The notes beneath the pieces are model-generated. The model searched no databases. It was not told the origin of the DNA and saw nothing but the letters and a program-made list of their open reading frames with translations. Below, in pieces: positions 7,628 to 47,964 of a stretch of DNA of 49,153 bases (positions within the stretch are counted from its first letter, which is position 1; each line of letters starts with the position of its first letter). Location: contig NC_068981.1 of NCBI RefSeq assembly GCF_001194135.2, positions 17,722,209 through 17,771,361 on the forward strand, in the 5' to 3' direction. Source of the stretch: Octopus bimaculoides (taxonomy: Eukaryota). Both the position numbers and the translations under genes were made by a program.

Positions 7628-7938
7628 TCAGCACTTAACAGCCTGTGGTACAGGATATTTGGACAGTTGTGCAACTGAAGGAACCAAGTCCGGCTTGTAC
7701 TGGTATTCTTCAAGAGTTTTTAACAAACTCTGACACATATTTACAGCACGTTTGTCCTGCAGCGTGCCATAAAGATGTGCAGCTTCTTCAACCATCTGTC
7801 TGCGACTCAGATTGTGTCCACCAATTGTTTCGCTTGTAGATGTGGCAGTTGGTAGGTGACAGCTGGCCAGGATCAATGCAGATGCCTCATCATGATTGCC
7901 AATGTGACTTTTGTTGTCATGATTCAAGCTGCTTTCAT
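7628..7938 (-). CDS. SREBF: SREBP last coding exon (..[13 protein letters not shown]...[23 protein letters not shown]...QAVKC*)
   Basis: Acceptor aactaccag|AT, phase 1; TGA at 7630-7628. Matches human EHAEALLLASCYLP...AEAARTLEKLGDRR..HDCQ. Confidence 0.95.
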
Positions 7939-10900
7939 CTGGTAGTTGGAATTAAAAAAAAAATAAACAATAACTTTCATTGTTATTTAAAACACAATAA
8001 TAAATAGTAAATTAAGAAATCACATAAAACAATCAACATTTTAGTCAACATCATTAATCATAAATTTTTACGTTGCCAGTACCGCCTGACTGGCTTTGTA
8101 GGGTTTTCGAGCGAGATCGTTGCCAGTGCCCCTGGACTGGCTCTTGTGCGGGTGGCACATAAAAGACACCATTTCGAGCGTGGCCGTTTTCGTGCGGGTG
8201 ACACGTAAAAGCACCCACTACACTCTCTGAGTGGTTGACGTTAGGAAGGGCATCCAGCTGTAGAAACTCTGCCAAATTAGATTGGAGCCTGGTGTAGCCA
8301 TCCGGTTGCACCAGTCCTGTCAAATCGTCCAACCCATGCTAGCATGGAAAGCGGACGTTAAACGATGATGATGATGATGATGACATGACTATCAGATAAA
8401 ACTTCACTGACGAACATATAACCATCACTCACTCACCAATATACATGTGGGGTGGTGAGGTGCATACGCATGTTTCTACCTGATTGATAAAGCTTCACTG
8501 ATTAACACAGCATAAAGTAGAAAATGATCAATATGTCAGCAGAAGCACAATCTCTCTGGCCTTGACAATATTGATGATCTTTCCTTCCCAGCAAATCAAC
8601 TGTGTAATCTGCAAGATTTGTTGAGATCCCTTGAGAATGCTGCAGCCAAGACCAGTCTGTTGCTATCAATGAAGATGAATGCTATCTGCCAATTTGTTCC
8701 AACAAAGGCACACAAATCAAGGAGCTCGTTGATGGAGGAATCATCATCATCATCGCTTAACGTCCGCCTTCCATGCTAGCATGGGTTGGATGATTTGACT
8801 GAGGACTGGCGAACCAGATGGCTGCACCAGGCTCATAGTTGATTTAATAAACTCAGCACTTGGAGAGTGGAAAGCAAGGCTAACCAGTGGAATCTGAACT
8901 CAGAACATAAAGAAATATAAATACCATAGGGCAATTTAATAACCATTTCTGCCATTAATCATAACTCTAATTTTTGGCACAAGGTTAGCAATTTACAGGA
9001 GAGGAGGAAGTTGATTACGCTGACCCCCAATGTTCAGCTGGTACATATTTCATGAACACTGAAAGGATGAAAGGCAAAGTTAACCTCAGCATCATTTGAA
9101 CTCAGAATGTTAAAAAAGGATGAAATACTGCTCAGCATGCCAACCATTCAGCCAACTTGCCTCTTTCTTAATAATCCTTTCTATTATAAGCACAAGGCCT
9201 GAAATTTTGGGGGATGGCGAAGTTGATCACATCAACGTCAGTACTTCACTGGTACTTAATTCATCGACCTCGAAAGGATGAAAGGCAGAGTCAACCTCGG
9301 TGGAATTTGAACTCAGAACATAGCAGCCGGCAAAATACTGCTAAGTATTTCTCCCAGCGTGTTAACACCTTCTTAATAATAATAATAATAATTCTTTCTA
9401 CAATAGGCACAAGGTCCGAAATTTTGGGGGAAGGGCGATTTGACTGCACTGAGTCTAGTGTTCAACTGGTACTTATTTCATCAACCCTAAAGGGATGAAG
9501 TCAACACTGGTGAAATATGATCTCGGAACATAAAGACAGATGAAATACAGCCAAGCATTTTGTCCAGTGTGCCACCGAGTCACCCTGCTCACTACCTTCT
9601 TCTTAACAACAACAAAAAAAGAAAGAAAGAAAAAAACGATCTGCAATAGAATACCTTCTTTTCCTTTTCCAGCACGTCTACGAAGACTTTGATCTAACAA
9701 TTGTTGAGTACGATATGGATTGGCACCAACCATGATACGTGCCGTGGCCTCGTAAAGAAATACCTAAAATGACACAGAGACAGAGAAAAAGAAAACAATA
9801 TTTATAAAACTTTGAGTTGAGTCAGTAATTAGCACAGGTGAAAAGTAAATTTGATATGACAGAAGAAATATGTCATTACTCTTTAGTAAAATTTTGAATA
9901 AGGAATAGGGAAAAAGCACTAGTCAAATTAGCCATTAATATAACATCAATTATCATAGTTTTGCAAAATTTGTGGGTCGGGAAGTGCCCTGCCAATACAC
10001 ATACTGTGATGAAATATTCTCGCTGGAAATTTATAATCCAAGAGATGACAGATGGAGGGAGTCCATAAACGAGCAACTTCACAAGAAAATTCTTATTTCA
10101 GACATCATGAAAAATTTAGATATGTGAAGAACATCATCATCAAGTGAGTTAATTAACAGGTTTAATGAAAAGAGAATTAAAACATGTTAACTTGATTTCA
10201 CTGACTTTTGGTAAGTTCTTCAGACAATTCTGATTATTGTATAAGATAACTTACAATCAAAATTTGGTCAAAAGATAAAGCAAATCAAAGAATTGATTCA
10301 ATATCATACGCTTAGGATATATTATGAACAGTTTGCTGTGTAATTTGTTCCTGTATGTTCCAAAGTGACAGATTACAGTGAAATAATTTTAAGTGTTTGA
10401 GGAAGGCAGGGGAACCCAGCAGAGAGCTTGTATATTTTGAAGAAATATATTGCAGATGTCTCTGTGTTCTATGGACATGACAAGAGATGCTGAATTTTAG
10501 CATGTTTGTTAATGGATCTGGATACACAGGTCTCAGTGGGAATAGTGTGACTAGCACTTGTACAACTCACACGGTGTCAGGAGTGGTAGGCATGGGGTTT
10601 CTAAAAAATACATACTTTTAGTATGATTCCTTTAATTCTTTTTGCTACTCTGAACCAAACTAGTGGTTCTAATGATAACATAACAGTCAAATCTAGATAT
10701 CATAGCAATATGTGATAAATAAATAAAATAAGAAAAAAAAATCTTTCACCTTTTTCAGTGCATGTTTCATGGTATGAGTAACACGACGGAGGCAATATAA
10801 ATCTTGCTGGAATGCAATAATATGCGAGTGTGATGGCCTGGTATAACTTGGATCTTGGCTCTGACGTTGTTGCCAAAGTTCTCGGCGAGTACGAAGAAGG

Positions 10901-13900
10901 AAGTCACATGTCAACAATTGGATGCCCTGTAGTAATATAACAATTGTTACATTCATATATCAGACACTGGAGGAGGTCGAGAGAGAGAAAATCAAACAAA
11001 TGATTAAAATTTCTTTCTTAAATATCAAGTCATATTACTTTTGCTATTTATTCTTGTAAATAGAACCATTATTTAATACATGTGGAATGAAGTAGCTGCA
11101 GCTAACACAAGTTTTTGATCATATCCTTAAAAAAAAAATCTCTGATTGATTAACAAACTTTCACTCCCCAACACACTGCACACCAAGACTACAGAAGTGT
11201 TGTGTCTTCCTCTGTCACTTTCACTGCGACTACAACAGCTCCTGCTCCTCCTAGTAAACCACCTGTGACCATCACCCCCACCAAGCCCCATTCAATACAT
11301 CAACCTAAGCTTCATCTGTCATCCTTGTTTATGTGTGTCTCAGCTCTCAAAGACCTGGCACTGAACATTTCACCTAATCTGTCATCCCTACAACTGGTAA
11401 GCCCCTCTCCTGCCAACTTACCCTACAAGCCTCAACCTACACACTTTCAAGCTAAATATGAATAACAATTGACTTCACTTATCTGGAAAGGTCTACATAG
11501 GCTATGAGCCCTCTGCTCTTCCTGGCAGTATGTTATAGCAAAAACTTATACTCAGTGGGTGGGAAGGTAATTAAAACAAGGGATAAACTTTCGTTAATTT
11601 ATCTACAAAACAACAACAATAATTTAAAATATGAACCATGTTATATCACAGGAAATGGAAAAAATTTAAACTGCTTCTGTTCATGTTGTTGTTGGCACTC
11701 CGTCGCTTACAACGTCAAGGGTTCCTGTTGATCCGATCAACGGAACAGCCTGCTCGTGAAATTAACGTGCAAGTGGCTGAGCACTCCACAGACACGTGTA
11801 CCCTTAACGTAGTTCTCAGGGATATTCAGCGTGACACAGTATGACTCTTTGAATTACAGGCACAACAGAAACAGGAAGTAAGAGTGAGAGAAAGTTGTGG
11901 TGAAAGAGTACAGCAGAGTTCGCCACCATCCCCTGCCGGAGCCTCGTGGAGCTTTTAGGTGTTTTTGCTCAATAAACACTCACAATGCCCGGTCTGGGAA
12001 TCGAAACCGCAATCCTATGACCGCGAGTCCGCTGCCCTAACCACTGGGCCATTACGCCTCCACATAAACTGGTNNNNNNNNNNNNNNNNNNNNNNNNNNN
12101 NNNNNNNNNNNNNNNNNNNNNNNNNNNNNNNNNNNNNNNNNNNNNNNNNNNNNNNNNNNNNNNNNNNNNNNNNNNNNNNNNNNNNNNNNNNNNNNNNNNN
12201 NNNNNNNNNNNNNNNNNNNNNNNNNNNNNNNNNNNNNNNNNNNNNNNNNNNNNNNNNNNNNNNNNNNNNNNNNNNNNNNNNNNNNNNNNNNNNNNNNNNN
12301 NNNNNNNNNNNNNNNNNNNNNNNNNNNNNNNNNNNNTTAGGGATATGATCTTTTATATTGACCAAGAGGTCAAACTGATCGAGTTGTTTTGTAAATCATC
12401 ATCATCATCGTTTAACATCCGCTTTCCATGCTAGCATGGGTTGGATGATGTGACTGAGGACTGGCAAGCCAGAAGGCTGCACCAGGCTCCAATCTGATCT
12501 GGCAGAGTTTCTACAACTCGATGCCCTTCCTAACGCCAACCACTCTGAGAGTGTAGTGGGTGCTTTTACATACCACCAGCATGAGGGCCAGTCACACGGT
12601 ACTGGCAACGGTCTCGCTCAAAAGGTGTTTTTTACGTGCCACCTGCACAGAAGCCAGTCCAGCGGCACTAGCAACGACCTCGCTCGAATGATTTTCTCAC
12701 GTGCCACCAGCACAAGTGCTGGAAGGCAATGCTCGTAACGATTACGCTCAAATGGTGCTATTTACGGGCCACTAGCACGGAAGCCAAAGAGCTGCTCTGG
12801 CAATGAACACACTCAGGCAGTGCTGATAGTGCTCCACTGGCACAGGTGCCAGTCAGCGGATATGGTTCAATTTCGATTTTGATTTCACTTGCCCCAACAT
12901 GTCTTCTAAAGCAGAGTTTAGTGTCCAATGAAGGAGAGAAACACAAAAGAAGTTAATAATTCAACAAATTTTATTTATATAAAATTAAAAGCCTATGAGA
13001 GAATATGTGCACCCACTAAATATATAATAGAATTCTCAGAGTGCATCTAGCCATTTCTTAAAGACAACTAAAACCAGTAGCTTAGTTTGACAAATTTCTC
13101 ATAGATTTTATATACAATAACAAGATTGGTTGTTATTTAGTACAGATAATTAACATACTGTAAAAACAGTATACAGAGTAACTAAAAAAAACCAAAGTGC
13201 TTTACATCACTTTCTGTAAATAGCAAAAGGGATTCAAAAGACGCAGACCTCATTTCCACCTCAGTACCCTATGTCAGAGAACAGTTTGTGAAACAGGCAA
13301 ATTTCAATTTTATGATATTTGCAATTATACAGGATGTAAAGTCTGAATGAGAAAGGAAGATAAGATCCTTGATTTGTCAGTACCTGTATTTCTGGATTGA
13401 TACTGTATCAGCAGGTAATAAAGAAAGGTGTGGGAAAAAAATAACAACTGTTCAGCAAGTGGATGATATATTTAGAAAGAGAAACCCAACCACTCAAAAC
13501 AAAGTAGCTGACTCCATACAATAAGTTTAGTTCAGTTCTATAAATACAAAATATTCATTACAGTGTTCATGAGAGCACAAAGGGGATGGGACACAGACAT
13601 GAAGTGGTAATATTCATACATTCCCAAAGTATACCAATATTAATGGAGCAATCCCAACTGGAGATTAAAATAAGGTCATGAATTTAGTTCACCAATAAAA
13701 TGACCATTATATTACAGCACTATCATAATCATAACAGTAATGATTATGATTTCTTAATTACACCTATTTCTGCCAACTATAATATAACCAAGCAGAGTTA
13801 TAACCTGTCTAAAGACACAATATATACAGTAGTGCAAGAAGTCAAGTGTTTAATATATTATTTTCCTTACTATTTCCTGTCACATTAGAAAGGTCTCTGT

Positions 13901-14168
13901 TGGTAGTTCCTACCTTATTAACATACAGAAGTAGAGCCAACTGCTCTGGATTCAAAATCTCAGAGACTAATGAGAAAAAACAAAAACATTTAATCTAGTG
14001 TAGCACTACTAGTTATATAGTAGAATAATAAAAGAACAGTTCTTGGTACAGTATTATATTTGAAAGAATGAGTAAAAATGGCTTTTTTGAGGGGATAAAT
14101 AGAATAAAAATTATCCCCTCAAAAAAGCCATTTTTACTCATTCTTTCAAATATATATATATTGTGCTC

Positions 14169-14215
<47 letters not shown>

Positions 14216-15295
14216 GCTCCTTTATATATATATATATATACATCATGCTAAATCAAGTATGATAACCATAATTTTTTATTGAGTTATAGGCAGTGCCTTC
14301 TTGGGTTTGGTTGATTATATTGACTCCAAAATTTTTAATTCACCTCAGAAAGAGAAAGATGAACACATGGGGAAATATTCTCACAGCATAAAAAGACATA
14401 ACCAAGTACCAGAAGTTGTTTAATCTGATACTCTACTGACTCTGTCATCTAGCCATTTTTGTCCTACCTTTATGACAAAATTGGCAGAGCATTGAACTAA
14501 ATGTCACATAGTTTTTAGTTACACCTTGTTACAGCTTCTTGGTCATCAATAAAATGGATCAATCTAGGGCATAGGATTAACAGAACTCTAATAATGTTGG
14601 ATCAGATGCCTTGTGGTATTTGTTCTGGTTCTTTGCATTTTTAGTTTAAATACCACCATGGCCTACTTGGGTGGTAGACTTAATCCGTTGCCTGGTTTAA
14701 CATACCGCCTGGTACCTTGGGGGAGCCTTTAGAGGAATCCACACCATCGTAAGCATTCAGATCAAATCTTCCGTTTGAAGATACCATCCTCTCTCCCACA
14801 GTTTTGTGATGTCTGAGATGAGTTGTTAATAAGATTATAATTTTTTGAGCTATTAATCCTTTTGATCCCACCCTGCTTGAAATGCCTCTGGTTCTATGAT
14901 ACAAAACCACCCATGTTAAAGTGTTTGTATTTAATTTAAATATTCCATTGTAATTTTTACGTAATATACTTTTATATTCTAAACAAACACCAGCTTAATG
15001 ACAACAATACTTTACTAAAATATTTTGATTATTTTCAAAATAAATTGAAGTTTATTCTTATTAGAAATATGGTTACAAAAAGATTGATCTCATCTTTAGA
15101 GATATAAAAGTTTCTATATTTAAACCTGTAAATGTAGGCACATGCATGGCTGTCTGGTAAAAAATTTGCTTCCCAACCACATGGTTCTGGGTTCAGTTCC
15201 ACTGCGTGTCACCATGGGCAAGTGTCTTCTACTACAGCCTCAAGTCAACCAAAGTTTATGAGTGGATTTGGTAGGTGGAAACTGAAAGAAGCCTG

Positions 15296-15336
<41 letters not shown>

Positions 15337-15342
15337 CACACA

Positions 15343-15399
<57 letters not shown>

Positions 15400-18379
15400 T
15401 ATATAATAATAATAATATATAACATCTGCTTTCCATGCTGGCATGGGTTGGACGGTTTGGTGGCGACCCCTGTTGTACTCTTTCACCCCAACTTTCTCTC
15501 ACTCTTTCTTCCTGCTTCTTGAGTAACACTGCGATGGACTGGTGTCCTGTCCAGCTGGGGAGGAACGCCTATGCCATAGAAACTGGGAAACCAGGCCCAT
15601 GAGCCTGGCTAGGCTTTGAAAGAGCACATAAATAAATAAAATAAAATACATTTATACACACACATGTCCTTGTGATGCATATGGATGAGGACAGTTGTGT
15701 AAAGAAGTGCTGATCTCTAACTGTGGAAGGAACCTGTGGAAGAGGTTGCAATTTAATTTTATACATCCAGACAAGCATGCATACTTGCTTCATGTCTTTC
15801 TAGCCTTCAGATATATTTTGCATTCAATACTTCACACTTTGTATACAAACATCATACAATCAGCCCTTCACTTAGAGAGAGAATCCATTTGTAACTAGTA
15901 GAGTTAAAGGCTCCATCAACATTTTTTTTCCAACATGTTCCTAATCTAACTATGCTTTTCAAACACTGAACTTCACTGCTAATTACATCACCTAGATAAC
16001 AAGAGCCATAAATTAATTCTAAGGAGTCTTCTAAGTATTTGAAAGAACTTATTTCATGGGTACTCTGACTGTTAACTACACCTGTACACCTGCTACACAT
16101 GAAATCTTTCTCCTGGGTTATCTGCCCATTGATTCCACTGAATCTTTTCTATGCTGTTTACATTTGGTACACAGTACAAAGTTACTAGAACTCCCTTTCT
16201 ACATTCAGAGTATGACCAGCTCTTTGACGTTAGCTTTATATATCTATACATATGTAAATGTGTGTGTGTGTGTGTGAGTGTCATACATGCATGCATGCAT
16301 GCATACATGTCATCACATCATTATTTCAAAATAATTTTATTTAATGTAGACATAAAAGATTACATCATAACAAACAATCTACCATTATCAGGTAAAAATC
16401 TTAGCTGTTTAAAATTTTACCTGATCATGGTGGATTGTATGTTATGATGTAATCTTTTCTGTCTACATTAAATGAAATTCTGCTGAAACAGCTCTTGTAA
16501 ATTTTAAACACCAATTTTGTTTGCACCACATCAAGGTAAGTCACATTGATGGCTACAAACTGGATTGGTACATGCCTATCTATGTGTTTGTACCTAGCCA
16601 TTTTCTGGTGTCTTACATGGTGTGCCTTGATTCTTAAGGAATCCTTTTAACTAATTCACACACACACACGTTTGGTCTCATACACTGAAAATAAGGAACC
16701 TGCAAAAAATCTTGAATTATTTAAGATTATTATATTGTCTGAGACACTCTTTGACATAAAAACTTCAAGTGTTATTATTTTGTCTTTATTGTGAGAGATT
16801 CTTAATTGTTAAAATATGAGTCATTCATTATGATTTGGCTGCCACAGTGAAAAGGTTGAGATGTTATATACAGACACACTCTTGCTGGCTGACATTAAGA
16901 ACAACAAAGGGACTGGTTAGTGAGGAATTGTGCTTTGGAGGATAAAATAGGCTGAGATTCTAAAAATAATGATACATAATGACTAAGAAAAATGCGAGAG
17001 ACAAGTTAATCTGAGGATCCAATAATAGATGTGACAGAGAAACAGAGGGGGTGTAAATTACTAAAAGCATTGTAAAGTGTGGAGGGTGGTTGAGGCATTC
17101 TCTGAAAGTTTAACTGAAGATATCCAGGCCTAACTCAGGAATATTTTAGTTCAGGCATGGCTGCGTGGTTAAAAAGGTTGCTTTGCAACCACGTAGTTTA
17201 GAGGGTTCAGTCCTACTGTGAGACACACTGAGCATCTTCTACTGCAGCCCTGGGCCAAATGCCATATGAGTGAATTGAGAAGATGGAAACTGTGAGGAAG
17301 TCCATTGTATATATATATATATATATATNNNNNNNNNNNNNNTGATGATGATCACGTGAAAAGACATTCAAGCGAAGTCGTTGCCAGTGCCCCTGGACTG
17401 GCTCTTGTGCGGGTGGCACATAAAATACACCATTTTGAGCTTGGCTGTTGCCAGTACCGCCTGACTGGCCTTCGTGTGGGTGACACGTAAAAGCACCCAC
17501 TACACTCTCTGAGTGGTTGGCGTTAGGAAGGGCATCCAGCCGTAGAAACTCTGCCAAATCAGATTGGAGCCTGGTGTAGCCATCTGGTTTCACCAGTCCT
17601 CGGTCAAATCGTCCAACCCATGCTAGCATGGAAAGCGGACGTTAAACGACGATGATGATGATGATCACGTGAAAAGACATTCAAGCGAAGTCGTTGCCAG
17701 TGCCGCTGGACTGGCTCCTGTGCAGGTGGCACGTAAAATACACCATTTTGAGTATGGCCGTTGCCAGTACCACCTTACTGGCCTTCATGCCGGTGGCATG
17801 TAAAAGGCACCCATTACACTCTCGGAGTGGTTAGCGTTAGGAAGGGCATCCAGCTGTAGAAACTCTGCCAGATCAGATTGGAGCCTGGTGCAGCCTTCTG
17901 GTTTGCCAGTCCTNNNNNNNNNNGATTGGAGCCTGGTGCAGCCTTCTGGTTTGCCAGTCCTCAGTCAAATTGTCCAACCCATGCTAGCATGGAAAGCGGA
18001 CGTTAAACGATGATGATGACGATGATGAATGTACATGTGTATATGTGATTGTGTTTTTGTTTGTCTCACACACATGCACACTGCTTGACAACTGGTGTAA
18101 GTTTGTTTATGTCGCCATAACTTAGTGGTTTGACAAAAGGTACCAATAGAATAATATCAAACTTAGTAAAATAAGTGATGGGGTCAGTCTTCCAGCATGG
18201 GCACAGTCCAATGGCTGAAACAGGTGATCCAGTCATGCAAAGCTGTTAGAGCTGAAGAAAAAGGACAGATTACTGGAGGGAGGGGGTGCTTCCCTTGAAT
18301 GTGGAAACTTTACAGAATATAGAAACAACAACAGCTATCTGTTCCCAAAATATCAGCAAAGTTGGCCAGTGGAACCCCT

Positions 18380-18416
<37 letters not shown>

Positions 18417-18565
18417 CTCTCTTAACCCAGCAAATAACTGAAGCTACACAACATTCAGGAGACTGTAGACACATTGCCAAGCACAAGTACTACACAAACA
18501 CACACACACAGAGCCAGAGATAACATATACACCTACAATCCACACAGCTATCTGCAAATAATAAT

Positions 18566-18635
<70 letters not shown>

Positions 18636-21600
18636 ATGATGATGATGATGATAATATAGCCCTATTATTGTTACAATACATACACACTACCTAAAATGCA
18701 AGAAAAAAAAAATGGCTAAGATGCTGATGCTGGAAACGACAATGGTGACGGAGTTGGTATCAGAAGTGCCTGCAGTGGTGGTGGTGGTGTTGGTGTTGGT
18801 GACAGCTGTGGTGGTGGTGGTGGTGGTGGTGGTGGTAGTGGTGGTGGCTGTGGTAGCTGTCGTCTAAGTCTGGTGTGTTGAGCAAGATGGTAGCAACTGT
18901 CCCTGATTACACTGTGTATGCACTGCATAATGCAAAGCTAATGCAATGCAACTAACAATGCAAAACAGACACAGTCAAAAGCAGCCACATTCGACATTAG
19001 GAGACACGGATTGAAGCTGGTGACGTCAGGAAACAGCTTTCCCAGCAGGACGCAGGACGGTAGACAGATACAGGGTGCAGGGAAACAACAATAAACAATA
19101 CAGCACATCTGATGGGGTTGCAACTGCAGCTGCACATACTTTGAATACAATGACTCTTGTGATAGCTGTTTCTGCTCTGGCAGTGAAAGGCTTTCATGAC
19201 ATAGACATCTACACACATGCACATATTGCATACAAACATGTGCACACACACACACACACAAACAATAGTTTATTTTTTTTTAACTTTGGGCTATTTCATT
19301 TTACAGTATTTTTTCTTTCAAAATTTAAATACCTTGGGAAAGAAATGTTTGTTTGTTGAGACAGTTTACACCTCTCACATGCAATGTTTTCTTCATAGAT
19401 CGTCATTTAAAAAGGGAAAAAAAAAACTTGTTCTTTCTCTCAAAGAAACCTAACTACCGTTGAAGTAAGGCTTAAAAAGGAATTAACAAACGTTATTAAC
19501 CGGAATATAATACCAGAGTTGAAGAAAGGCCCAGGAGGGGAATTAACAAATGTTATTCACAGGAATGTGACACAAGTGAATTCAAAGACCCAGTCTTTGC
19601 TGATACAATAATGATGATGAAAATAATAATGGTTTCAAATTTTAGTACAAGGCCGGCCATTTTTGAACGAGAGGGTTTGTCAGCTACATCAATCCCAGTA
19701 CTTCGCTGGTACTTTATTTTATCACTCCCGAAAGACTGAAAGGCCAAGTTGACCTTGGTGGTATACAAAGACATGGAGGGTGGAATTATAGTTGATTTTA
19801 ACTGACTGCAGGACTCTACTTTTCGTATAAATTTAGTATAAAACAAACTGTTTAGGAATCGCTTCTTAAGAATGAAAATGATACATGCTTGCATCTAAAT
19901 ATGATTTATTTCAGTGATTCATATAAATTTGCTTATATAGCATATTAAGGATGTGTTGTAATGGCATCCAATGCTATTTGCAAGCAGTTGCTAAGTTTTT
20001 ACTTATTTCTTTTATTTATAATTTCATCAATCCAAAGTGATTGGAATTAATGTTACTAAACATTTCAATCTATTTTTATCTGTTATTTTTAAAACTCACT
20101 AATTTATACAGTTTTTATTCATATTCTCTAACTTTTACTTTATCATATACCAAAAATATTTTGTTATTGATATATCTAATGATACACATAAAAGAATTGT
20201 AACGACCTTTTAAAAAATCAGTTTAAACATAACATCGATAATAAAGAAACATAACCTTCTTGTGTAGTAAGCTACCTGCAGCTGTTATTGGCATGTAAAA
20301 TATATGTATATTTGTATGGTGCAGTAAACATAAGTGACATATTATAGTGTGAGTTGAATTAAATAAAAGTAAAAACTACAGCTTACTTTAATAACATCAC
20401 TATGATCAGAACTCTTTTCAAATTTAAGACTTTCGCGGAGTAAACGGCCAGCATGATCACACTGACGTAGTATACTGGAGTCTGAAATATTCTGAGTACT
20501 GGACAGGAATCGGCGCCGAGCTTTATAGGCAAAGAAGACAGCTTTGGGCAGTGGATCACTGTTAAAATGATGTGAGATAGAATAAAACAATCAAGGATAA
20601 AAACTGATGAAGCGATTAAAGTAAAAACAGATTATCAGGATTTTAGATTAAAATACATTAAAAATTTCATAAAGAACTGTAAAAAGAAGGAAAAATTAAA
20701 CATGTATCAAAATTTTGATTAAAATCTTTAGAATATGTTTAAAATACAAAAATTGCTTATTCCGTTTCTCCAAATTATCTTTTAATATTTTCTAAAACAC
20801 AACAACATTTTGAAATAAAGGATTCATCAACATTTATCAACCCTGTTTTTTTTTTGTTTTTTTTTTAATCAATCTAATAAAGTTACAAGAAAAACAAAAG
20901 TACTATAACAAAGTAAATGTAATTACAATGTGAGGAAAGAAAAACATACTATATTTGAGAACATAAAAGATGCACACCAATTTCAGCAGTATATATTCAG
21001 GGAAAAAAAAGTTTCAGTATATTAAAGCTTATGGGAGACCCAACTTTGCATATAGGACCCAGAGTGATTTTCTNNNNNNNNNNTGGCAATGGTACTTGTC
21101 ACAAAAAGAGGACAAAGATGAGAAAAGGGTAAATAATGTTAGGGAGGGGTGGGGGGGAGATATTGAAGTCAGTGGAACAACATTTTTTTGTTAAGCAACT
21201 ACAACTGTCCAAAATGCGGAATTCTCCTCTTCTTTCCTTATTGTATAATTATATTAACGTTGTACTTTTGTTCATTGGTCTTGTTTTTTTTTTTCTTGTT
21301 TTTTTTTGCTTTGTCTTTTTTCAAGATTCTAGGTGAATATTCCACTACCAAACAAACACAGACTATTAGGATTACTGCTGGATTTTTATTATTATATTTC
21401 ACTCAACTATTTTATGTCCATATTTCTATACAAAGACGACTCGACAAGTCTGCAACTGTTACGTTTCCATTAGTCTTCTTCTCGCATCATTTTGTCTATG
21501 ATGAACAACCTTCACGCTTGGTATTACCAACATGCGCCAACTGAACACATTTTATCACTAGTTTACCAACCTGTACACTTACTAATGATATTTTTAGACA

Positions 21601-22363: not shown

Positions 22364-25300
22364 ACTGCTGTTGCTATTGTTGTTATTGTCATCATCATCA
22401 TCAACAGCATGATCATTTACTACAACAGATATATACAGAAATGCTCTAAAAACATCATTCATAGGCGTAAGAGTGGCTGTGTGGTAAGTAGCTTGCTTAC
22501 GAACCACATGGTTCTGGGTTTAGTCCCACTGCGTGGCACCCTGGGCAAGTGTCTTCTACTATAGCCTCGGGCCGACCAAAGCCTTGTGAGTGGATTTGGT
22601 AGACGGAAACTGAAAGAAGCCCGTCGTATATATGTATGTATGTGTGTGTGTGTGTGTGTGTGTATGCTTGTGCATCTGTGTTTGTCGCCCCAACATCATT
22701 TGACAACCGATGCTGGTGTGTTTACGTCCCTGTAACTTAGCGGTTCGGCAAAAGAGACCGATAGAATAAGTACTAGGCTTACAAAGAATAAGTCCCGGGG
22801 TCGATTTGCTCGACTAAAGGCGGTGCTCCAGCATGGCCACAGTCAAATGACTGAAACAAGTAAAAGAGTGAAAGAGTAAACAAAAGAGTAAGAGAGTTAA
22901 TTCATACCTTGCACCAATAAACTTCTTGGGGAAAACATCAAGAAGATGAAAGTTGCGTTCTGCATTTCCATAATCACCAGTGAACCAGTAAGTAGCCACA
23001 TTGACAATAGCTGACCACCACCGAGCAATTTCATCAACATCCAACACAGAAGGAACCACTGACAAGAAAGCAAAAGATGTTTTATTTAACCCTATGGCAT
23101 TCAGATTACTCTGTCAAATGCAATGCTTATTTATTCACATTGTTTCGAATCAATCCTACATTATCTTACAGCTTCAAGATTTTGATGATGTGATTGTTTA
23201 TCTTTTAGAATGACGTTGCAGGGTAAGTGTGAAAGGCTGGATCTGGTTGGTTTGAATATAAAAACAAAATGGTAGGACATCTGGCCTCACTCTATATAAC
23301 TTGGTGATGACAGTAAGTCAAAAAGACTATATCATATATAAGACATTGATTAATGATGACATTTGTGCTGACAGGCTCTTTTATAATTAGGACCTTTGGG
23401 TGGATTAATAATGATAATTGTTTCTGGACCACTTCACTATACACCTAACTTACTCTAGGAGGTTAGTTATATAATGATGTTGAAATATGTAACAGGGACA
23501 AAAACAGGTGTCTTGCCGTAGGAGAGAGACATGGTTGTGCCAGTTAGATAAGAGATACCAAAAAAAAAAAAAAAATACAAAAGGTTCCTTTGATTTTTTT
23601 TTTTTTTCAATAAGTCAAATAGATTCTATTTCAACACAACGATGTAATCTTCACAAATGTTGAATATCAACCTTAAAACACATTTACTATAGAGGAGAAA
23701 AAAACAGTGAGTTACATCAGCAAGAAGCACTTTCCATTTGTTCAAAGAAGTAAGCAAAAACTCATTTTACTACTACTACATCATTATTATCATCATCATT
23801 GTCATCATCATCATCATCATCATTTAACATTTCTTTTTCCATGCTGGCATGGACTGAATGGTTTGGCAGGAGTTGGCAAGCAGGAGAGCTGCACCAGGCT
23901 CAAATTGTCTGTTTTGGCATCGTTTCTACAGCTGGATGCCCTCCCTAATGCCAACTACTTTACAGAATATACTTGGTACATTTTACATGGTACCAGAAAG
24001 GGTGCTTTTTCACATGACATCAGCATAGGTGCTTTTTACATGGCACCAGCAGCAAAACTTCAATAATGTTCTAGAAACCAGCACTAAGTCTTCCACTCAC
24101 TGAAACATAAAGAAAACATTCCCCTACCTTGGTTTGGCAGTTTCACAGACTCTTGAATGAGTATTGTTGATTCTTTTGACTGTAAACAGGAACAATCTGC
24201 CAATAACTGTGTGTACTGTGTCACCTCACTGATAAAACTAGTTCTGAAAATACAACCAAAACAATAGCTACAACTTTGGAGTTTCTTAACAGCAATATTT
24301 CATATAAAAACATGCGGAGTGGAGAGAACTAAATGTTTTACTTTTAAATATCTTATAACTTTCAAACATTGTATAGTCAGAATAATTCAACATTTTTCTT
24401 CATTTTCCAAAGCAAACCGGTTAGAATGCTACCTATCATAGGTCTACTCAGCCAGAGCTGATCTGGGGATAAACAAAATCAACAAAAAGGCAAGACAAGT
24501 AGGGTCTTCAAAAACACCAGAAGATATCTTATAACAAAAATAATTTAAATGAAGGTCAAATTTTAAGCAAAACTGTTTTAATCAAACTATCTTGTCACTC
24601 TTACGCAGTGGTTCTCAACCATTTTTTTTTCACCTAGGGACCCCTTTGATTAAATATTTTATTCTCGTGGACACCCATAGCGATTCAATGTTTAAAACTA
24701 GTTTTATACATACTCCTTTCAAAATTCCTATTTTGTTTTTCACACATTAACTTGTGTAAGTTGAGCTATGTAAAATGTTAGAGAGAGAAATCTAGTCGTT
24801 TCATGCAATAAAGACATCTAAATCAAAGTATTTCATGGACCCTTAGAATACTACTTGTGGGTCCTCGATTTACTATTTTGTTAGCATGCCCAATTGAGAA
24901 ACACTGTTCTAATTAGTACCAACATCTGGATGCCGTCGTCGTTTAACATCCGCTTTCCATGCTAGCATGGGTTGGACGATTTGACTGAGGACTGGTGAAA
25001 CTGGATGGCAACACCAGGCTCCAATCTGATTTGGCAGAGTTTCTACAGCTGGAAGCCCTTCCTAATGCCAACCACTCTGAGAGTGTAGTGGGTGCTTTTA
25101 CGTGCCACCGGCACGAAGGCCAGTCAGGCGGTACTGGCAACGGCCACACTCAAAATGGTGTATTTTACGTGCCACCTGCACGGGAGCCAGTTCGGCGGCA
25201 CTGGTAAGTGTTGTAACATTTACGTAGACATTTCTCTTTATTATCCCTCAATAATAGACTGATACTCCTTTCAGAAGAGCATTTCTAATGAAATACACAG

Positions 25301-28101
25301 TCCGTGAATTTCAAAACATATTTTTATTAAAAATCAAGAATTGGGAAGAATTTGGTTAAATAAATACCCTTTTCATTAAGCTGATATTTGGAATATAACT
25401 TAAGAAAAGGTTCAGTGATAAAATTACAATGGTAAATGCGTTAATCAAATTCATGAACATAGCTGCTTCACCACCTGATGAGACATCAACTTCTGCATGC
25501 AAGTGCTAACTCTAAATGCATCATAGAAGCAAGAGTTGATTTAGGTAGGTCGGTATCAAAAGCGCTAAAGATCCTAATTAGTCAATGAAGGTAGGATCCT
25601 AAATCTAGGAAAAACGATCTGCATTGATTCATAAAACAAGGTGAATATTTACAAAGAGACATATTTAAAAAGCTTCAAAAACTGACGCAGTACCTTTCCC
25701 ACTTCTGAGACGGATTGTTCAAGATAGCAAGTGACTTTGCTAACAGATGTTCACGAAAGTGTCTAGTGACGATAGCCAGAGGATCGACTGAAAATAGACG
25801 AATTGTTAAAAAAGAATTTAAAATAAAATATCATAACGTTTTACAACATGTGGTCCCTTTTCTAGCTAAATAAACCATATAAAGGGTTATCAACCTCCAA
25901 ATACAACGGGGAGCAGTGCATAGTATATTTAGTCAGTGACTCAGCAGTTTTGAAGATGTTTTGGAATGGTTACCCTTTATAAATCTATCCATACAAACAG
26001 TAGATTTATAAAGGGAGGTAAAAAGCAACAGAAAAAAATTTCTGATTTGTAATTCACAAGTATAAAGCACTATAACTTGAGGGTAATGCACCACAAACTA
26101 TTCTGCACCTCAAGGTGAGACTGAATCTGAATTACTGACAGCAGGTTCTACTCTTATTCAACAGCTGATTGATTAAGCAGCAACAAGCACAATCATTAGG
26201 AAAAACACTAATTTCAGTCATTTTCAAATGGTCAAATTTGTAATTGCCATTCTACCTATTTTTAATACTCTTGATGTCAAAATGGAAAAATCAATGCAAA
26301 ATATAAACAAGAGGTAAAAATCAAACAAAATACAAAGTTAACAGAAAAATTAGACAACTGAAATTCATCTTTATTGTTTTAATGTTCACTTTTCTATGCT
26401 TGCAAGGGTCAAACAGTTTATTAAGGTGAATTTTCTATGGCCAGATGCTCTTCCAATTGCCAACCCTCACCTGTTTCCAAGCAAAGTAATATTTCCCTAT
26501 AACCAGACCATGTTTCTGCAGAATATTGGAAGTGAATGATACTGCTTATATAACAGTAACACTCGTTTACAACTGACACTCAACGTCAAGACCAGGAGAA
26601 GCAAACATACATGCACTCTTACACACACACATGCATATATACATGCATACATCATCATCATTGTCGTTGTTTAACATCTACTTTCCATGCTGGCATGGGT
26701 TGGATGGTCTGACTGAAGACTGGCAAGCCAGTAGGCTGTGCCAGGCTCCAGTCTGGTCTGGCAATGTTTCTACGACTGGATACTCTTCCTAATGCCAACC
26801 ACTCCGCGAGTGTAGTGGGTGCTTTTTACGTGCCACCAACATGAGGTTTAGTCAGGCAGCACTGGCAATGACCACGGTTGAATGGTTATTCTTACGTGTC
26901 ACTGGCATGGGAGCCAGTCAGGCGGCACTGGCAATGACCACACTTGAATGGTGCTTTTTACGTGTCACTGGCACAGGAGCCAGTCAGGCGGCACTGGCAA
27001 TGACCACACTCGAATGGTGCTTTTTACGTGTCACTGGCACAGGAGCCAATCAGGCGCCACTGGCAACAAATGCATACGTCATACTCTTTTATTCTTTTAT
27101 TTGATTCAGTCATTAGACTGTGGCCATGCTGGGGCACCACCTCAAAGAATTTTAGCCAAATAAACCAACCACAAAGCTTAATTTTTTTTCTTTTTTAGTG
27201 TTGCTGTGTTTATGTCCCCATAACGTGCTAGTGGCACATAATAAGCACCATTCAAGCAAGGGTCGATGCCACATAAAAAGGACCATAGGAACATGGTCGA
27301 TGCCAGTCCCCTTGCTTCCCAACTGGATGCCGTGCCGGTGGCACGTAAAAGGCACCCACTATAATTCCAGGGTGGTTGGCATTAGGAAGGGCATCCAGCT
27401 GTAGAAACCTTGCCAGATCAGATTGGGGCCTAGCACAGCCTACTGGCTTGCCAGTCCCCAGTCAAACTGTCCAACCTGTGCCAGCATGGAAAACGGACGT
27501 TCGATGATGATGATGAACTTAGCAGTTCAGGAAAAGAGTCCAGTAGAACAAGTACCAGGCTTTAAAATAATATTTATTATTTAAAATAATAAGAGTCAAT
27601 TCATTGACTAAAATATTCTTCAAGGCAGTGCCCCAGCATGGCCACAGTCTAATAAGTGAAACATGTAAAAGATAAAAAATATCTCCCAAAAAAAAGAAAA
27701 TCGTATTTTAAAAATTTCCGTCAGAAATAGATTGAATAATTAAAAACATTTTTTCAAATTTTCATCTTACCATGATTGCCAATACTGGAGAAAGAACTTT
27801 CTTCAAAGCTTATATCCCAGAAACTGTCAACAAAGAATCGGTAACCATCTTTATGGCATAACCACTGGATATAAGCAGGAACTTTCCCTTCACAGCGAGA
27901 ACAAGCGTGGCTCACTTTATGGAGGAAGTAACGCTGAAAAAGAGGAGATAAATCAAAATAGAAGTTGAAAGGATTCTAGCTTTAATTTCACTCTTGAGAA
28001 ATTCCTGGAAAATAAGAATTATTAACTGTAAAGGATAAAACACATCCTATTATACACCATCTTGAGACACTGAAGAGCAACAACAAAAATGGGACTCAAA
28101 C

Positions 28102-28140
<39 letters not shown>

Positions 28141-28846
28141 ATGGGTGTATGTGTATGTGTGCACATATATTGAAAAATTATTTTGGATGAAACAGCTTAA
28201 TGGTTAACTAANNNNNNNNNNTAACTAATACTTAGGAATCCATGTATATCCAATCAAGTAGTAAATATAATTTGTCCTCTGATTTTTTTTTTTTTTTTTT
28301 TTTTGGTATTATATAGATTTGTATGATTTACAGAATGTATAACCACAAGCAAAATTAAACAGATTTCGTTTATCTTTTTATTGTTACATCCTCCTGTTGT
28401 ATTTTGCTTGTGTGTGTGTGTGTGTGTGTAATTATGTATGTAATGGATGGATGGATGGATGGATTTATTTTCTACAAGAAATCATTCCTGAATCACTGAA
28501 AGGGACAAAAGTGCTAAATAAAATAGTTTTTGTTTTTTTCCCTGATTTCCTTCTTTTTCTTAATATACGTATACATATATATGTGTGTACGCATGCATGT
28601 GTGTGTATGTGAGTGTGTGCGCGCGTGCACACGTGTGTGTATGTAAATGTAAGATCCAAGGATCAAGGTGTAGGAAGAAAGTTAGCATCAAGCAATCCAT
28701 AGTGAATATAAAAAAACAACTTTCAGGAACAGTGGTTTACTGAGGCTGAAGGTTGTGGAATTTTTTTTATTGAATAAAAATAAGAAATGAAACATACATA
28801 ACCCAGATCTTATCTACTCCATTCCTTAACTCTCTCTCTCTCTCTC

Positions 28847-28893
<47 letters not shown>

Positions 28894-30785
28894 ATGCGTG
28901 CGTGCGTGTGTGTGTGTGTCACTCTTCAGGTGATCACATTAGTTATAATACAGAGAAGATGCTATTTCATCTCAAATTAGCTACAATATATTGATTCTGT
29001 GATATTTTATTTTAACAAGGTAAATCATAAGTGACATAATTCTAGCATGATAGGTTAATAATACCCAACATTTATATGTAGACTCGGGATTTTATCCATC
29101 ATAACCATTAGAATTAGATCAGTTGAGATCGATAGTTCTCAATTGGAGTCTAGACGACCCTTGGAGATCCATATGACCCTAAGGGGTCCACATAAGATTT
29201 TGCTGCTAAAATTTATGTGCAATAAACTGGTTATAGGTTATATTTCTACAAGATACAAAATATTTTAACAATTTTTTTATACAATTCCCAATAATATTTA
29301 CTTATAAGAATATAATAATATGATTTTTTAAATATTGATTATTTATGAGGGTCCACTGAGCAAAACAGGAATCAAAGGGATTCATAAGTAAAAAAGGGCC
29401 GAGGATCACTGGTTTAGCCTTTAATGGTTCAAGGAGTTTGTAAAGTTGGCAAAAGTGATATTAGAACCTAGAATTGAATGTCATATCATCATTTAACAAC
29501 AACAATGAAAACAGTATTATGTTCTAATAGCTATTAAGTAAATAAAATAAAATATATATATATAAACAAATATAATTGCAGAAACTGACCAAAGATAAAC
29601 AATTACAGGACAACTGATAAGAACGAACAGGGAAGTAGTTTTATGATAGAAAGATTATCTTGGATTAGTGATTTTAAATCTAACATTCTCTACATACATT
29701 TGTTTATCTATCATTCATGTTCTTTGTACTTTAAAATACTCAGACATTATTACAGAACATAGCTGTTTTCAATGAACAGATTAATAATTGAGGAGATTAA
29801 GCTCGCTTAAGAACACTGGGGGTAATCCACTTAGTGGTTGGCGTAAATTTTCAAGATCAGTAAAAGCAACTCACACAGAGAGATTTCAAGTTAAAAGGGG
29901 CACTCTGGTGGATCGTTATGGCAGCTGTAGCATAGATCTCAGCGAGAGTAGAAGTCGGAAGCATTTCTCCGGCAGCTTCAGCAAGGTTGACAGCACACAG
30001 AGCCAAGTTAATCCCATAGGCTGAGCTACCACTTGTGTGACCTAGGTAAAAGAAAGAGATAAAGATTACATGAGAAAGGGATAGAAAGGGAGAATGTTAG
30101 AAATAAAAGCTAAAATTTTTGCAGACTGCATGGGGAGATAATCTATGAAAAAAAGTAAGAGAAATGTGTTTTTTGAAAGTAATTAATTTTTAATGCTGAC
30201 ATTAAACAATAAATGCAATGTGTTATGTTATCATTGAATGATCTTAAACAGAGATTCAATTTCAATCTTTAATACATACATAGCACTGTGAAAACAACAA
30301 CATGAAATATTAGTATTCCTGGCTAACATCACATGTTGCCATTATGTTTAAAGATAACACCTGCATACCAATATCAACAAACTTTATGTCATTTAGGCTA
30401 TATTCCCATAAAGCTGTAGCAAAGTACAACTTGAAAATGCAAATATATAAGGTTATATGAACCTACATTGGATGGCACCTCAGCCCAAATCATAAATCTT
30501 GAACACTTGCCACAGCAAAATCAATCTTAAACTAAAACTTTCTCAGCTCATGACAAGAACTTGGTCAACATACATCTTTCATTAAGTTCATTATATCCCC
30601 TCTGATATACTCTCAAATATTCCCCATTCCACATGGTCAAGAGGGCCTTTTCCTGTTCTTTTTCTGTCTCATGAGTTACTTGGCAACCTCACTAGTGCTG
30701 GTGCCACAAAAAAGGTAACCCGGTACACACTGCATTAAGTAGTAGGTGACGAGCAGGCAGAAACGTTAGCATGCCAGGTAAAATT

Positions 30786-30831
<46 letters not shown>

Positions 30832-33445: not shown

Positions 33446-33497
<52 letters not shown>

Positions 33498-36452: not shown

Positions 36453-36483
<31 letters not shown>

Positions 36484-39039: not shown

Positions 39040-39073
<34 letters not shown>

Positions 39074-41565: not shown

Positions 41566-41596
<31 letters not shown>

Positions 41597-42821: not shown

Positions 42822-42869
<48 letters not shown>

Positions 42870-43155
42870 CTGTTGCCAGTATTAGAGTTTAATCTTCAAT
42901 TAATCTCATAATACACACACACACAAATGATGTGGAATTAGAACAACAGTGTTCTCATGTGAAAATATTAATTAGGAAACATGTTTTCTCTCATGGAACA
43001 GCCTCGTTTATTTTTCAGCCACATATTTCACTCTGTAAAATGGATGTCATTAAGTAAAAACCATGCCAAAACAGACAGTAGAGCTGGACACAGACCTCTG
43101 GTTCACTAGCTTTTGTCGAACTGTCCAACCCATGCCAGCATGGAAGACATGTTGA

Positions 43156-43217
<62 letters not shown>

Positions 43218-47619: not shown

Positions 47620-47964
47620 CTATAGAGAATTGAGTGAATTGAAATTCATTCAGTTTTGACAATCAGCTAAAGGAACGGATTGATACCCCAAGTTACAACA
47701 GCCTTCCACAGTAACATGTATATATAAATATATATATATATAATTTAAATAATTTGGGAAAATGAATTTCCAAATCAATCAGGTACAACCCTTCAGCATA
47801 ACATGCATCTGCATATCGTACCTTGGGGTCTTATTTATCATATATTTATATATTTATCTAGAAATGTACAAAGTATCTAATAAACGTCAATAATAATTCA
47901 GTTTTGGGGATTAATAGATATACGGGTATTCTATTTCAGATAATACAAAAAATATAACCTAATG

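What the first reader, a model, noticed from the sequence alone, without database searches (positions are those of the whole stretch)
18895..18976. miR-33 inside the SREBP intron equivalent to human SREBF2 intron 16: the host-miRNA lipid module in a cephalopod
Seen: a well-formed hairpin on the SREBP strand with the miR-33 seed (UGCAUUG). The lower stem pairs out to -13, with basal U(-14)G(-13) and CAUC starting 16 nt past the predicted 3' Drosha cut. It lies between the ...DVIK and GIQLLTCD... exons, the fourth- and third-last coding exons. Established: miR-33a lies in SREBF2 intron 16 (19 exons, so the same position counted from the end), miR-33b lies in SREBF1, and Drosophila miR-33 is also SREBP-intronic. 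In mammals it represses ABCA1 and fatty-acid oxidation genes. Inference: the co-transcribed transcription-factor/miRNA circuit persists here at the same intron despite 9.5 kb of repeat turnover. The ORF track cannot show it. The arrangement is known in other phyla; I cannot tell whether this locus is already annotated.
Basis: partly seen in the sequence, partly recalled or inferred. Interest (0 to 1): 0.8.

Follow-up and report, generated by a model that had tools for sequence, protein, structure and literature searches.

The report
Known miR-33 hairpin inside SREBP intron

Summary
Confirmed and ordinary. On the minus strand, 18895-18976 folds into a 35-bp stem (-42.5 kcal/mol, z -3.2). The plus strand does not fold (z -0.04). 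The 5' arm reads UUGCAUUGUUAGUUGCAUUGCA, with the miR-33 seed UGCAUUG at nt 2-8. Rfam mir-33 is the best family: 39.6 bits, E 1.1e-5 over the whole window. This is below the curated 50-bit cut-off because of a G1>U change and one extra U at position 10.

The hairpin lies 1,418 nt inside a 9,460-nt phase-0 GT..AG intron, between ..SDHSDVIK and [11 protein letters not shown].. of a gene homologous to SREBP. Three coding exons follow.

In four contigs from other, unidentified animals (three distinct genes), an intact mir-33 (57-69 bits for the three scanned) lies on the coding strand in exactly this intron. A further contig keeps only a decayed 3' arm there.

The literature already reports oyster miR-33 inside SREBF-1, and Ovu-Mir-33 as annotated and expressed in Octopus vulgaris with the matching seed site. 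The same 138 families are annotated in O. bimaculoides.

Not tested: processing of this copy, co-transcription with the host, and lipid targets. The stored part of a published octopus conserved-site table lists no Mir-33 site in ABCA1, CPT1A, HADHB or CROT. The window's species could not be verified.

The parts
18895..18976 (-). pri-miR-33 stem: lower stem, miRNA duplex and apical loop
   Evidence: Fold at -42.5 kcal/mol, z -3.2. The plus strand is unstructured. RNAalifold with four other loci keeps 30 pairs, 7 of them with compensatory changes, mostly in the lower stem.
18903..18968 (-). Stretch matched by the Rfam mir-33 model (RF00667, positions 1-69)
   Evidence: 39.6 bits against a gathering score of 50. 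E 1.6e-7 locally and 1.1e-5 over the whole window.
18942..18963 (-). Predicted mature miR-33-5p, UUGCAUUGUUAGUUGCAUUGCA (seed 18956-18962)
   Evidence: Sequence read. The seed agrees with the Ovu-Mir-33 target 8-mer CAATGCAA and with Ovu-Mir-33_5p reads. Compared with the canonical GUGCAUUGUAGUUGCAUUGCA of L001, nt 1 is U and there is one extra U at position 10.
18905..18925 (-). Predicted miR-33-3p (star), CAGUGCAUACACAGUGUAAUC
   Evidence: Derived from the / structure, assuming 2-nt 3' overhangs. This is an inference; no reads were available.
18976..18977 (-). Basal UG at -14/-13
   Evidence: Present here only, not at this position in L001, L003 or L005, so it is weak evidence.
18886..18889 (-). 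CNNC (CAUC) starting at +16 from the predicted 3' Drosha cut
   Evidence: CNNC is also at +17 in L001 and L005. In L003 it is at about +15 to +17, read by hand because the L003 minimum-energy fold took another register.
10927..20386 (-). Host intron: 9,460 nt, phase 0, GTAAGC...CTACAG
   Evidence: It contains 287 N in three assembly gaps. 24% of it matches repeats found elsewhere in the window. The hairpin itself is unique.
20387..20558 (-). SREBP coding exon ..[26 protein letters not shown] (4th-last)
   Evidence: tblastn to L003, L005, L006, L007 and L001, E 1e-23 to 6e-7.
10750..10926 (-). SREBP coding exon [15 protein letters not shown] (3rd-last)
   Evidence: The alignment starts at residue 1 in all loci. 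The 116-column alignment across the junction has no gaps.
9655..9763 (-). SREBP coding exon [36 protein letters not shown] (2nd-last)
7628..7938 (-). Last SREBP coding exon, ending ..PVPQAVKC then stop
   Evidence: The acceptor and phase 1 are consistent with the previous exon.
22913..47662 (-). Upstream SREBP coding exons (approximate): 47.6k LTPPGS; 36.2-35.9k [19 protein letters not shown]; 33.9-33.7k FVYGEPV; 31920-31657; 30018-29887; ~27.9k [14 protein letters not shown]; 25785-25702; 23083-22913
   Evidence: The bHLH exons are not in the window.

Best explanation
This is the orthologue of the bilaterian microRNA gene Mir-33. It is a canonical (non-mirtron) intronic miRNA hairpin on the coding strand of the SREBP gene, in the same phase-0 intron that carries mir-33 in other animals.

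Shown: the hairpin, the seed, its strand specificity, the host gene, and exact intron orthology.

Inferred from established miRNA biology:
- The hairpin is transcribed as part of the SREBP pre-mRNA.
- Drosha/DGCR8 cut about 13 bp above the basal junction (5' cut before 18963, 3' cut after 18905), helped by a downstream CNNC.
- Dicer removes the loop.
- The 5' arm UUGCAUUGUUAGUUGCAUUGCA is loaded into Argonaute and represses mRNAs with CAAUGCA sites.

Whether those targets are lipid-efflux or fatty-acid-oxidation genes in this animal is not known.
For: Hairpin:
- -42.5 kcal/mol, z -3.2 on the minus strand, against z -0.04 on the plus strand.
- Best Rfam family is mir-33: 39.6 bits, E 1.1e-5 window-wide.
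- The double-seed motif is unique in the window, with 0.02 expected.

Host gene:
- Eleven exon peptides match, in order, the exons of contigs L001 and L003-L006 (E down to 1e-30).
- The bHLH exons of L001 and L003 hit human SREBP-1a (1AM9) at E 9e-17 and 6.5e-12, and L001 also hits Pfam HLH.
- The sequence carries the DRSR..NP and RSLL motifs typical of SREBP site-2 and site-1 cleavage (motif meaning from my own knowledge).

Intron orthology:
- All six loci have a GT..AG phase-0 intron between ..(I/V)(K/Q) and (G/A/S)xQ(L/V)LxCD(F/W)LL.
- The flanking exons are 57 and 59 residues in every gene and align without gaps.
- That intron holds mir-33 at 69.1 bits (L001), 56.8 (L003) and 60.6 (L005) on the coding strand. 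L004 holds it by pattern match. L006 holds a decayed 3' arm.
- The lower stem co-varies: 7 compensatory pairs.
- CNNC lies at +16 or +17 in octopus, L001 and L005.

Literature:
- Ovu-Mir-33_5p is sequenced in O. vulgaris tissues. Its conserved target 8-mer CAATGCAA equals this seed. The name has no paralogue suffix, so one gene is annotated (nomenclature from my own knowledge).
- The same 138 families are annotated in O. bimaculoides.
- Oyster cgi-miR-33 lies in an SREBF-1 intron.
- miR-33 is intronic in human, chicken, fish and Drosophila SREBP genes.
Against: - The score is below Rfam's gathering threshold, so nothing is reported at that threshold.
- No small-RNA reads could be mapped here, so processing of this particular copy is unproven.
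- The window's species could not be identified.
- Pfam and PDB give no hit to the octopus C-terminal exons themselves. SREBP identity is transitive, through L001 and L003.
- Host and miRNA are only weakly co-expressed in oyster (r 0.58) and not co-regulated across chicken tissues.
- In the stored (truncated) part of the octopus conserved 8-mer table, CPT1A carries a Mir-71 site and CROT a Mir-1 site. ABCA1, ABCG1, HADHB, HADHA, NPC1, PRKAA1, SIRT6 and IRS2 do not appear.
- The basal UG is not conserved in the other loci.
Confidence: 0.88

Rival explanations
1. It is a genuine Mir-33, but it is transcribed from its own promoter inside the 9.5-kb intron rather than processed from the SREBP pre-mRNA. 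Host and miRNA would then be uncoupled.
For: The hairpin lies 1.4 kb from the donor and 8 kb from the acceptor, in a repeat-rich expanded intron. Oyster host-miRNA correlation is weak (r 0.58). Chicken shows no co-regulation across tissues. A Drosophila study reports direct regulation of miR-33 by E2f1.
Against: Orientation is sense in all five genes examined. Residence in one and the same intron across distant animals is most simply explained by dependence on host transcription. No promoter evidence could be obtained with these tools.
Confidence: 0.12
2. It is a decaying or unprocessed relic of mir-33. The 1-nt insertion and the G1>U change are early signs of decay, and the expressed Mir-33 is encoded elsewhere or has been lost.
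For: The score is below the Rfam gathering threshold. A truly decayed copy exists in the same intron of another animal's SREBP gene: L006 has the 3' arm only.
Against: Both arms, the seed, the 3' half GUUGCAUUGCA and a strand-specific 35-bp stem are intact. The centre of the 5p arm (nt 9-11) also varies in loci that score above threshold: UUG in L003 and AGG in L005. A single Ovu-Mir-33 with exactly this seed is expressed in octopus.
Confidence: 0.05
3. It is a chance hairpin arising from TGCATT-rich simple sequence next to microsatellites, with no relation to miR-33.
For: The region is flanked by (CCA)n and (TG)n microsatellites. Other sub-threshold 'miRNA' hits in the window are repeat artefacts, such as mir-297 and mir-466 on CA/TG runs. 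A 21-nt exact match elsewhere proved to be chance.
Against: E is 1.1e-5. The motif is expected 0.02 times. It sits on the right strand of the one intron that carries mir-33 in other animals.
Confidence: 0.01

Closest known systems
Ovu-Mir-33 / Obi-Mir-33 (MirGeneDB; Zolotarov et al. 2022, PMC9699675)
   Same: Same family and same seed: the target 8-mer is CAATGCAA. The 5p arm is dominant. An A at 0-based index 4 fits UUGCA. The family is annotated in both O. vulgaris and O. bimaculoides. This is most probably the same gene, if the window is from one of these species.
   Different: The precursor sequence and coordinates are not in the held text, so identity could not be checked base by base. 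The paper does not discuss the host gene. No held paper combines miR-33, SREBP and cephalopod.
cgi-miR-33 in an intron of SREBF-1 (CGI_10004108), Crassostrea gigas (PMC4138081)
   Same: A mollusc miR-33-5p inside an SREBP-family intron. The authors had already noted its conserved sequence and location.
   Different: That paper does not state which intron. Host co-expression was weak (r 0.58).
Human MIR33A in SREBF2 intron 16, and MIR33B in SREBF1 intron 17
   Same: The unidentified animal gene L001 has a bHLH that matches human SREBP-1a. It carries the canonical GUGCAUUGUAGUUGCAUUGCA in the intron orthologous to the octopus one.
   Different: The octopus 5p has U at nt 1 and an extra U at nt 10, which shifts nt 13-16 by one. 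The intron is 9.5 kb, against about 1-3 kb in the compared loci. The mammalian targets (ABCA1, CPT1A, HADHB, CROT) are not supported for octopus. The human exon junction itself was not examined.
Drosophila mir-33 in the SREBP gene
   Same: Intronic in the single SREBP gene of a protostome.
   Different: The intron position was not compared here. The fly mature sequence differs in its 3' half (from my own knowledge).

Membership tests
Mir-33 (Rfam RF00667 / MirGeneDB MIR-33) | A hairpin of about 60-70 nt with an imperfect stem of about 22 bp above a lower stem of about 11-13 bp, on one strand only | tested here: met
Mir-33 (Rfam RF00667 / MirGeneDB MIR-33) | 5p-arm mature sequence with seed UGCAUUG at nt 2-8 and the conserved 3' half GUUGCAUUGC | tested here: met
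   Invariant with L001, L003 and L005 except for nt 1 and one inserted U at nt 10.
Mir-33 (Rfam RF00667 / MirGeneDB MIR-33) | Match to the family covariance model | tested here: inconclusive
   39.6 bits is significant (E 1.1e-5 over the window) and is the top family at this site. It is below the curated gathering score of 50, so nothing is reported at that threshold.
Mir-33 (Rfam RF00667 / MirGeneDB MIR-33) | Conserved genomic position: sense strand of an SREBP intron | tested here: met
   The same phase-0 intron as mir-33 in L001, L003, L004 and L005.
Mir-33 (Rfam RF00667 / MirGeneDB MIR-33) | Expressed 5p and 3p reads of about 22 nt with homogeneous 5' ends and 2-nt offsets (MirGeneDB criteria) | not testable with these tools
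   Literature only: Ovu-Mir-33_5p reads in O. vulgaris tissues.
SREBP (host gene) | bHLH-Zip DNA-binding domain with the SREBP-type HNAIEKRYR basic region | not testable with these tools
   These exons lie outside the window. They are present in the orthologous loci L001 and L003.
SREBP (host gene) | Two-pass membrane hairpin with DRSR..NP in TM1 and a luminal RxxL site | tested here: met
   [26 protein letters not shown]..SSRSLL, and LFVYGEPV read. The meaning of the motifs comes from my own knowledge of SREBP processing.
SREBP (host gene) | C-terminal regulatory domain homologous to known SREBPs | tested here: met
   Exon-by-exon tblastn to loci that carry SREBP bHLH exons. There was no direct Pfam or PDB hit.
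Mirtron | Hairpin ends coincide with the splice sites | tested here: not met
   The hairpin is 1,418 nt from the donor and 7,976 nt from the acceptor.

The most novel reading that the evidence does not exclude
The physical Mir-33/SREBP linkage has been kept in one specific phase-0 intron since before the lineages compared here diverged. In octopus the linkage survived a 5-10-fold intron expansion. At the same time the miRNA acquired a lineage-specific centre (an extra U at nt 10, and U at nt 1). Its conserved targets may no longer include the classic lipid genes. If so, the linkage is maintained for a reason other than the mammalian ABCA1/CPT1A circuit.
Probability: 0.25. Interest if true: 0.3.

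Novelty: already known. Interest (0 to 1): 0.15.

Why it matters
It is a clean positive control for the scan. A reader without tools recovered a real, conserved non-coding gene and its host from raw sequence, with correct cut sites.

Biologically it adds little. Mir-33 is a catalogued bilaterian family, it is annotated in octopus, and its residence in SREBP is reported from human to fly and oyster.

Two modest points are worth keeping:
- The intron position is identical at residue and phase level in every animal SREBP gene I could fetch. I did not find this stated in the held literature.
- A standard Rfam gathering-threshold annotation misses this copy because of a 1-nt insertion in the centre of the mature sequence.

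Tried and rejected
- Rfam at gathering threshold: no hit. The hit appears only with E-value reporting.
- Pfam and PDB sequence searches with 693 aa of concatenated octopus exons: nothing. SREBP identity had to be established through L001 and L003.
- Protein search with the spurious ORF that overlaps the 5p arm, meant to fish out other cephalopod loci: no candidates.
- Exact 21-mer scan of JGI metagenome contigs: one hit (L010). It is a chance match inside a bacterial dehydrogenase-like ORF with no hairpin.
- P0008 contigs (L007-L009; 70% identical exon, likely the nearest relative) end about 750 nt after the exon, too short to reach a hairpin. No cephalopod-to-cephalopod comparison of the hairpin was therefore possible.
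- L011 (an SREBP1-like contig) ends before the relevant intron.
- Full-text searches for the mature sequence, for run or assembly accessions, and for miR-33 + cephalopod + SREBP: no papers.
- The MirMachine and MirGeneDB 3.0 papers have no held supplements. The key 2010 paper PMC3840500 is not held.
- Mirtron reading: rejected on distance from the splice sites.
- Antisense miRNA: rejected (plus-strand z -0.04; Rfam 19.6 bits).
Full report
**Observation**

Read on the minus strand, 18990-18880 contains GUUUUGCAUUGUUAGUUGCAUUGCAUUAGC...AUGCAGUGCAUACACAGUGUAAUCAGG. It folds into one long hairpin at -42.5 kcal/mol. Dinucleotide shuffles average -30.6 +/- 3.7 (z -3.21), and 2 of 200 fold as well. 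The complementary strand gives -23.3 kcal/mol, z -0.04. Five G:U pairs become A/C mismatches on that strand, so the structure belongs to the minus strand.

- With the seed UGCAUUG at 18962-18956, mature nt 1 is 18963.
- In the structure, positions -3 to -13 of the lower stem are paired, with one mismatch at -7.
- G(-13) = 18976 pairs with 18895. These are exactly the coordinates of the finding.
- U(-14)G(-13) is present, and CAUC begins 16 nt after the predicted 3' cut.

**Is it more than chance?**

- At Rfam's gathering thresholds the window has no hit at all.
- With E-value reporting, mir-33 (RF00667) matches 18968-18903 end to end at 39.6 bits (gathering score 50). E is 1.6e-7 in a 701-nt search and 1.1e-5 for the whole window, both strands, all families.
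- The antisense strand scores 19.6 bits.
- The shortfall comes from nt 1 (U instead of G) and one inserted U at position 10 of the 5p arm (alignment).
- The motif TGCATTG-N(3-6)-TGCATTG occurs once in the window, against 0.02 expected.
- Other sub-threshold 'miRNA' hits in the window sit on CA/TG microsatellites or long palindromes, and are artefacts.

**Host gene**

Stop-to-stop reading of the minus strand and tblastn give an ordered series of exons, listed in the parts table. The membrane-hairpin exons read [32 protein letters not shown] at 36.2-35.9k and LFVYGEPV at 33.9-33.7k. The last four coding exons are:

| Exon | Coordinates | Peptide |
|---|---|---|
| 4th-last | 20558-20387 | ..SDHSDVIK |
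| 3rd-last | 10926-10750 | [11 protein letters not shown].. |
| 2nd-last | 9763-9655 | VFLYEATAR.. |
| last | 7938-7628 | ends in a stop codon |

The bHLH exons lie beyond the window.

Pfam and PDB do not recognise the C-terminal exons directly, and the large protein collection returned only unnamed exon ORFs. Identity was therefore established transitively:

- Contigs L001 and L003, fetched through those ORFs, carry the same exon series in the same order (E down to 1e-30).
- Upstream they also carry a bHLH exon that matches human SREBP-1a (PDB 1AM9), at E 8.8e-17 for L001 and 6.5e-12 for L003. L001 also matches Pfam HLH.
- The DRSR..NP and RxxL motifs are, from established knowledge of SREBP processing, the site-2 and site-1 protease determinants.

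**Intron orthology**

The hairpin lies 1,418 nt into a 9,460-nt intron (20386-10927). The donor is AAA|GTAAGC, the acceptor is CTACAG|GGC, and the phase is 0. The same junction was examined in five other loci:

| Locus | Junction | Intron length (nt) |
|---|---|---|
| L001 | ITQ / AMQVLVCDWLL | 1,135 |
| L003 | IIK / AVQLLLCDWLL | 954 |
| L004 | IIK / AVQLLLCDWLL | 1,057 |
| L005 | AIK / SVQLLICDWLL | 1,731 |
| L006 | TVK / SIQLLLCDWLL | 3,018 |

- All are GT..AG and phase 0.
- The flanking exons are 57 and 59 residues in every gene, and the 116-column alignment across the junction has no gaps.
- Rfam finds mir-33 above threshold on the coding strand in this intron: 69.1 bits in L001 (and its near-duplicate L002), 56.8 in L003 and 60.6 in L005. 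L004 has it by pattern match.
- L006 keeps only the 3' arm. The 5' arm and seed are gone.
- An RNAalifold consensus of the five hairpins keeps 30 pairs. Seven show compensatory changes, concentrated in the lower stem, while the miRNA duplex is nearly invariant.
- CNNC lies at +16 or +17 in octopus, L001 and L005. In L003 it is at about +15 to +17, read by hand because the L003 minimum-energy fold took another register.
- The basal UG is not shared.

The source organisms of these contigs are unknown (ENA assemblies; no paper cites them). I can therefore say 'other animals', but not which phyla.

In L001 the two exons after the intron are fused. Counting exons from the end is therefore not a reliable homology criterion. 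The residue-level junction is.

**Equivalence to human SREBF2 intron 16**

No human sequence was available. The claim therefore rests on three things:
- The junction is invariant in all fetched SREBP genes, including one (L001) with a canonical GUGCAUUGUAGUUGCAUUGCA.
- Literature places miR-33a in SREBF2 intron 16, miR-33b in SREBF1 intron 17, mouse miR-33 in intron 15, and chicken and rabbitfish miR-33 in intron 16.

It is very likely, but only indirectly tested.

**What is already known**

- Xu et al. 2014 placed cgi-miR-33 in an intron of oyster SREBF-1, and remarked on the conserved sequence and location.
- Zolotarov et al. 2022 annotated 164 miRNA genes in O. vulgaris, and 162 in the same 138 families in O. 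bimaculoides, deposited in MirGeneDB.
- Their tables list Ovu-Mir-33_5p reads and a conserved target 8-mer CAATGCAA. This is the site for seed UGCAUUG. An A at 0-based index 4 fits UUGCA.
- The name carries no paralogue suffix, so one gene is annotated. This reading of the nomenclature is from my own knowledge.
- No held paper combines miR-33, SREBP and cephalopod, and none prints this mature sequence. The host relation in cephalopods may therefore be unstated in print, but it is the expected one.

**Mechanism and function**

The most likely mechanism is the canonical one:
- Co-transcription with the SREBP pre-mRNA.
- Microprocessor cleavage about 13 bp above the basal junction.
- Dicer cleavage.
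- Loading of the 5p arm.
- Repression through CAAUGCA sites.

Only the anatomy is shown. The rest is inferred.

Caveats:
- Host-miRNA co-expression is weak in oyster and absent across chicken tissues, so independent transcription remains possible.
- In the stored, truncated part of the octopus conserved-8-mer table, CPT1A carries a Mir-71 site and CROT a Mir-1 site.
- In the same table, ABCA1, ABCG1, HADHB, HADHA, NPC1, PRKAA1, SIRT6 and IRS2 are absent. One listed Mir-33 target is PPP1CB.
- This is weak negative evidence against simple transfer of the mammalian lipid circuit (targets listed).

**The intron**

- It holds 287 N in three assembly gaps.
- 24% of its bases match repeats found elsewhere in the window.
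- The hairpin is unique.

**Verdict**

The finding is a known miRNA family in its known host gene, already reported for a mollusc and annotated for octopus.

- Novelty: already known.
- Interest: low (0.15).
- Residual interest: the residue-exact conservation of the host intron, the lineage-specific 1-nt insertion that drops the hairpin below Rfam's threshold, and the open question of whether the lipid targets are conserved.

Noticed in passing
window 42495-42577 (-): A second, very stable hairpin on the SREBP strand, in the intron between the 47.4k and 36.2k exons. The stem is about 40 bp and nearly perfect (-50.1 kcal/mol, z -6.7). Rfam mir-22 scores only 30.1 bits against a gathering score of 48, and the Mir-22 seed is absent. 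The arms are unique in the window. Six candidate seed-match 8-mers are not in the octopus target table. It could be a young miRNA, a hairpin RNA or an inverted repeat. It remains unexplained.
   Followed up: partly
L006:11949-11985 (intron 10154-13171): In another animal's SREBP gene, the orthologous intron holds only the mir-33 3' arm (ATGCAATGCATCTGCAGTGCAAGTACCA). The 5' arm and seed are lost, so this is a decayed mir-33. L005, from the same ENA assembly (ERZ26696912), keeps an intact copy. The two may be paralogues or different species.
   Followed up: partly
window 16324-16488 (+): An inverted repeat with 74-nt arms, 89% complementary and 17 nt apart. It gave a sub-threshold plant MIR4371 hit of 61.8 bits against a gathering score of 110. 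It looks like a palindromic repeat element, not a miRNA.
   Followed up: partly
window, many sites, e.g. 8054-8332, 17213-17629, 24995-25207, 31338-31517, 33132-33386, 34576-34842, 48643-48890: A SINE-like repeat is scattered on both strands. Its translation reads ..[41 protein letters not shown]... It accounts for much of the 24% of the miR-33 intron that matches repeats elsewhere in the window.
   Followed up: no
window 18800-18860 and 19200-19260 (-): The hairpin is bracketed by microsatellites. A (CCA)n run begins about 30 nt 3' of the CNNC motif, and a (TG/CA)n run lies about 250 nt 5' of the hairpin. Neither overlaps the stem.
   Followed up: no
window 12074-12336, 17329-17342, 17914-17923 (and eight more gaps elsewhere): Runs of N inside the miR-33 intron total 287 nt, so the 9,460-nt intron length is an assembly estimate.
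   Followed up: yes
L003 and L004 (ENA ERZ25071447, contigs of 459 kb and 852 kb): Two near-identical SREBP loci, each with an intact mir-33, sit on two long contigs of one assembly. They are haplotypes or a recent duplication. Their 5p is GUGCAUUGUUGUUGCAUUGCC.
   Followed up: no
L010:377-397 (-): The only exact match to the octopus-type 21-mer in JGI metagenome contigs lies in a bacterial ORF (..[36 protein letters not shown]..). The ORF looks like a 2-hydroxyacid dehydrogenase, and there is no hairpin. It shows that a 21-nt identity alone can be chance.
   Followed up: yes
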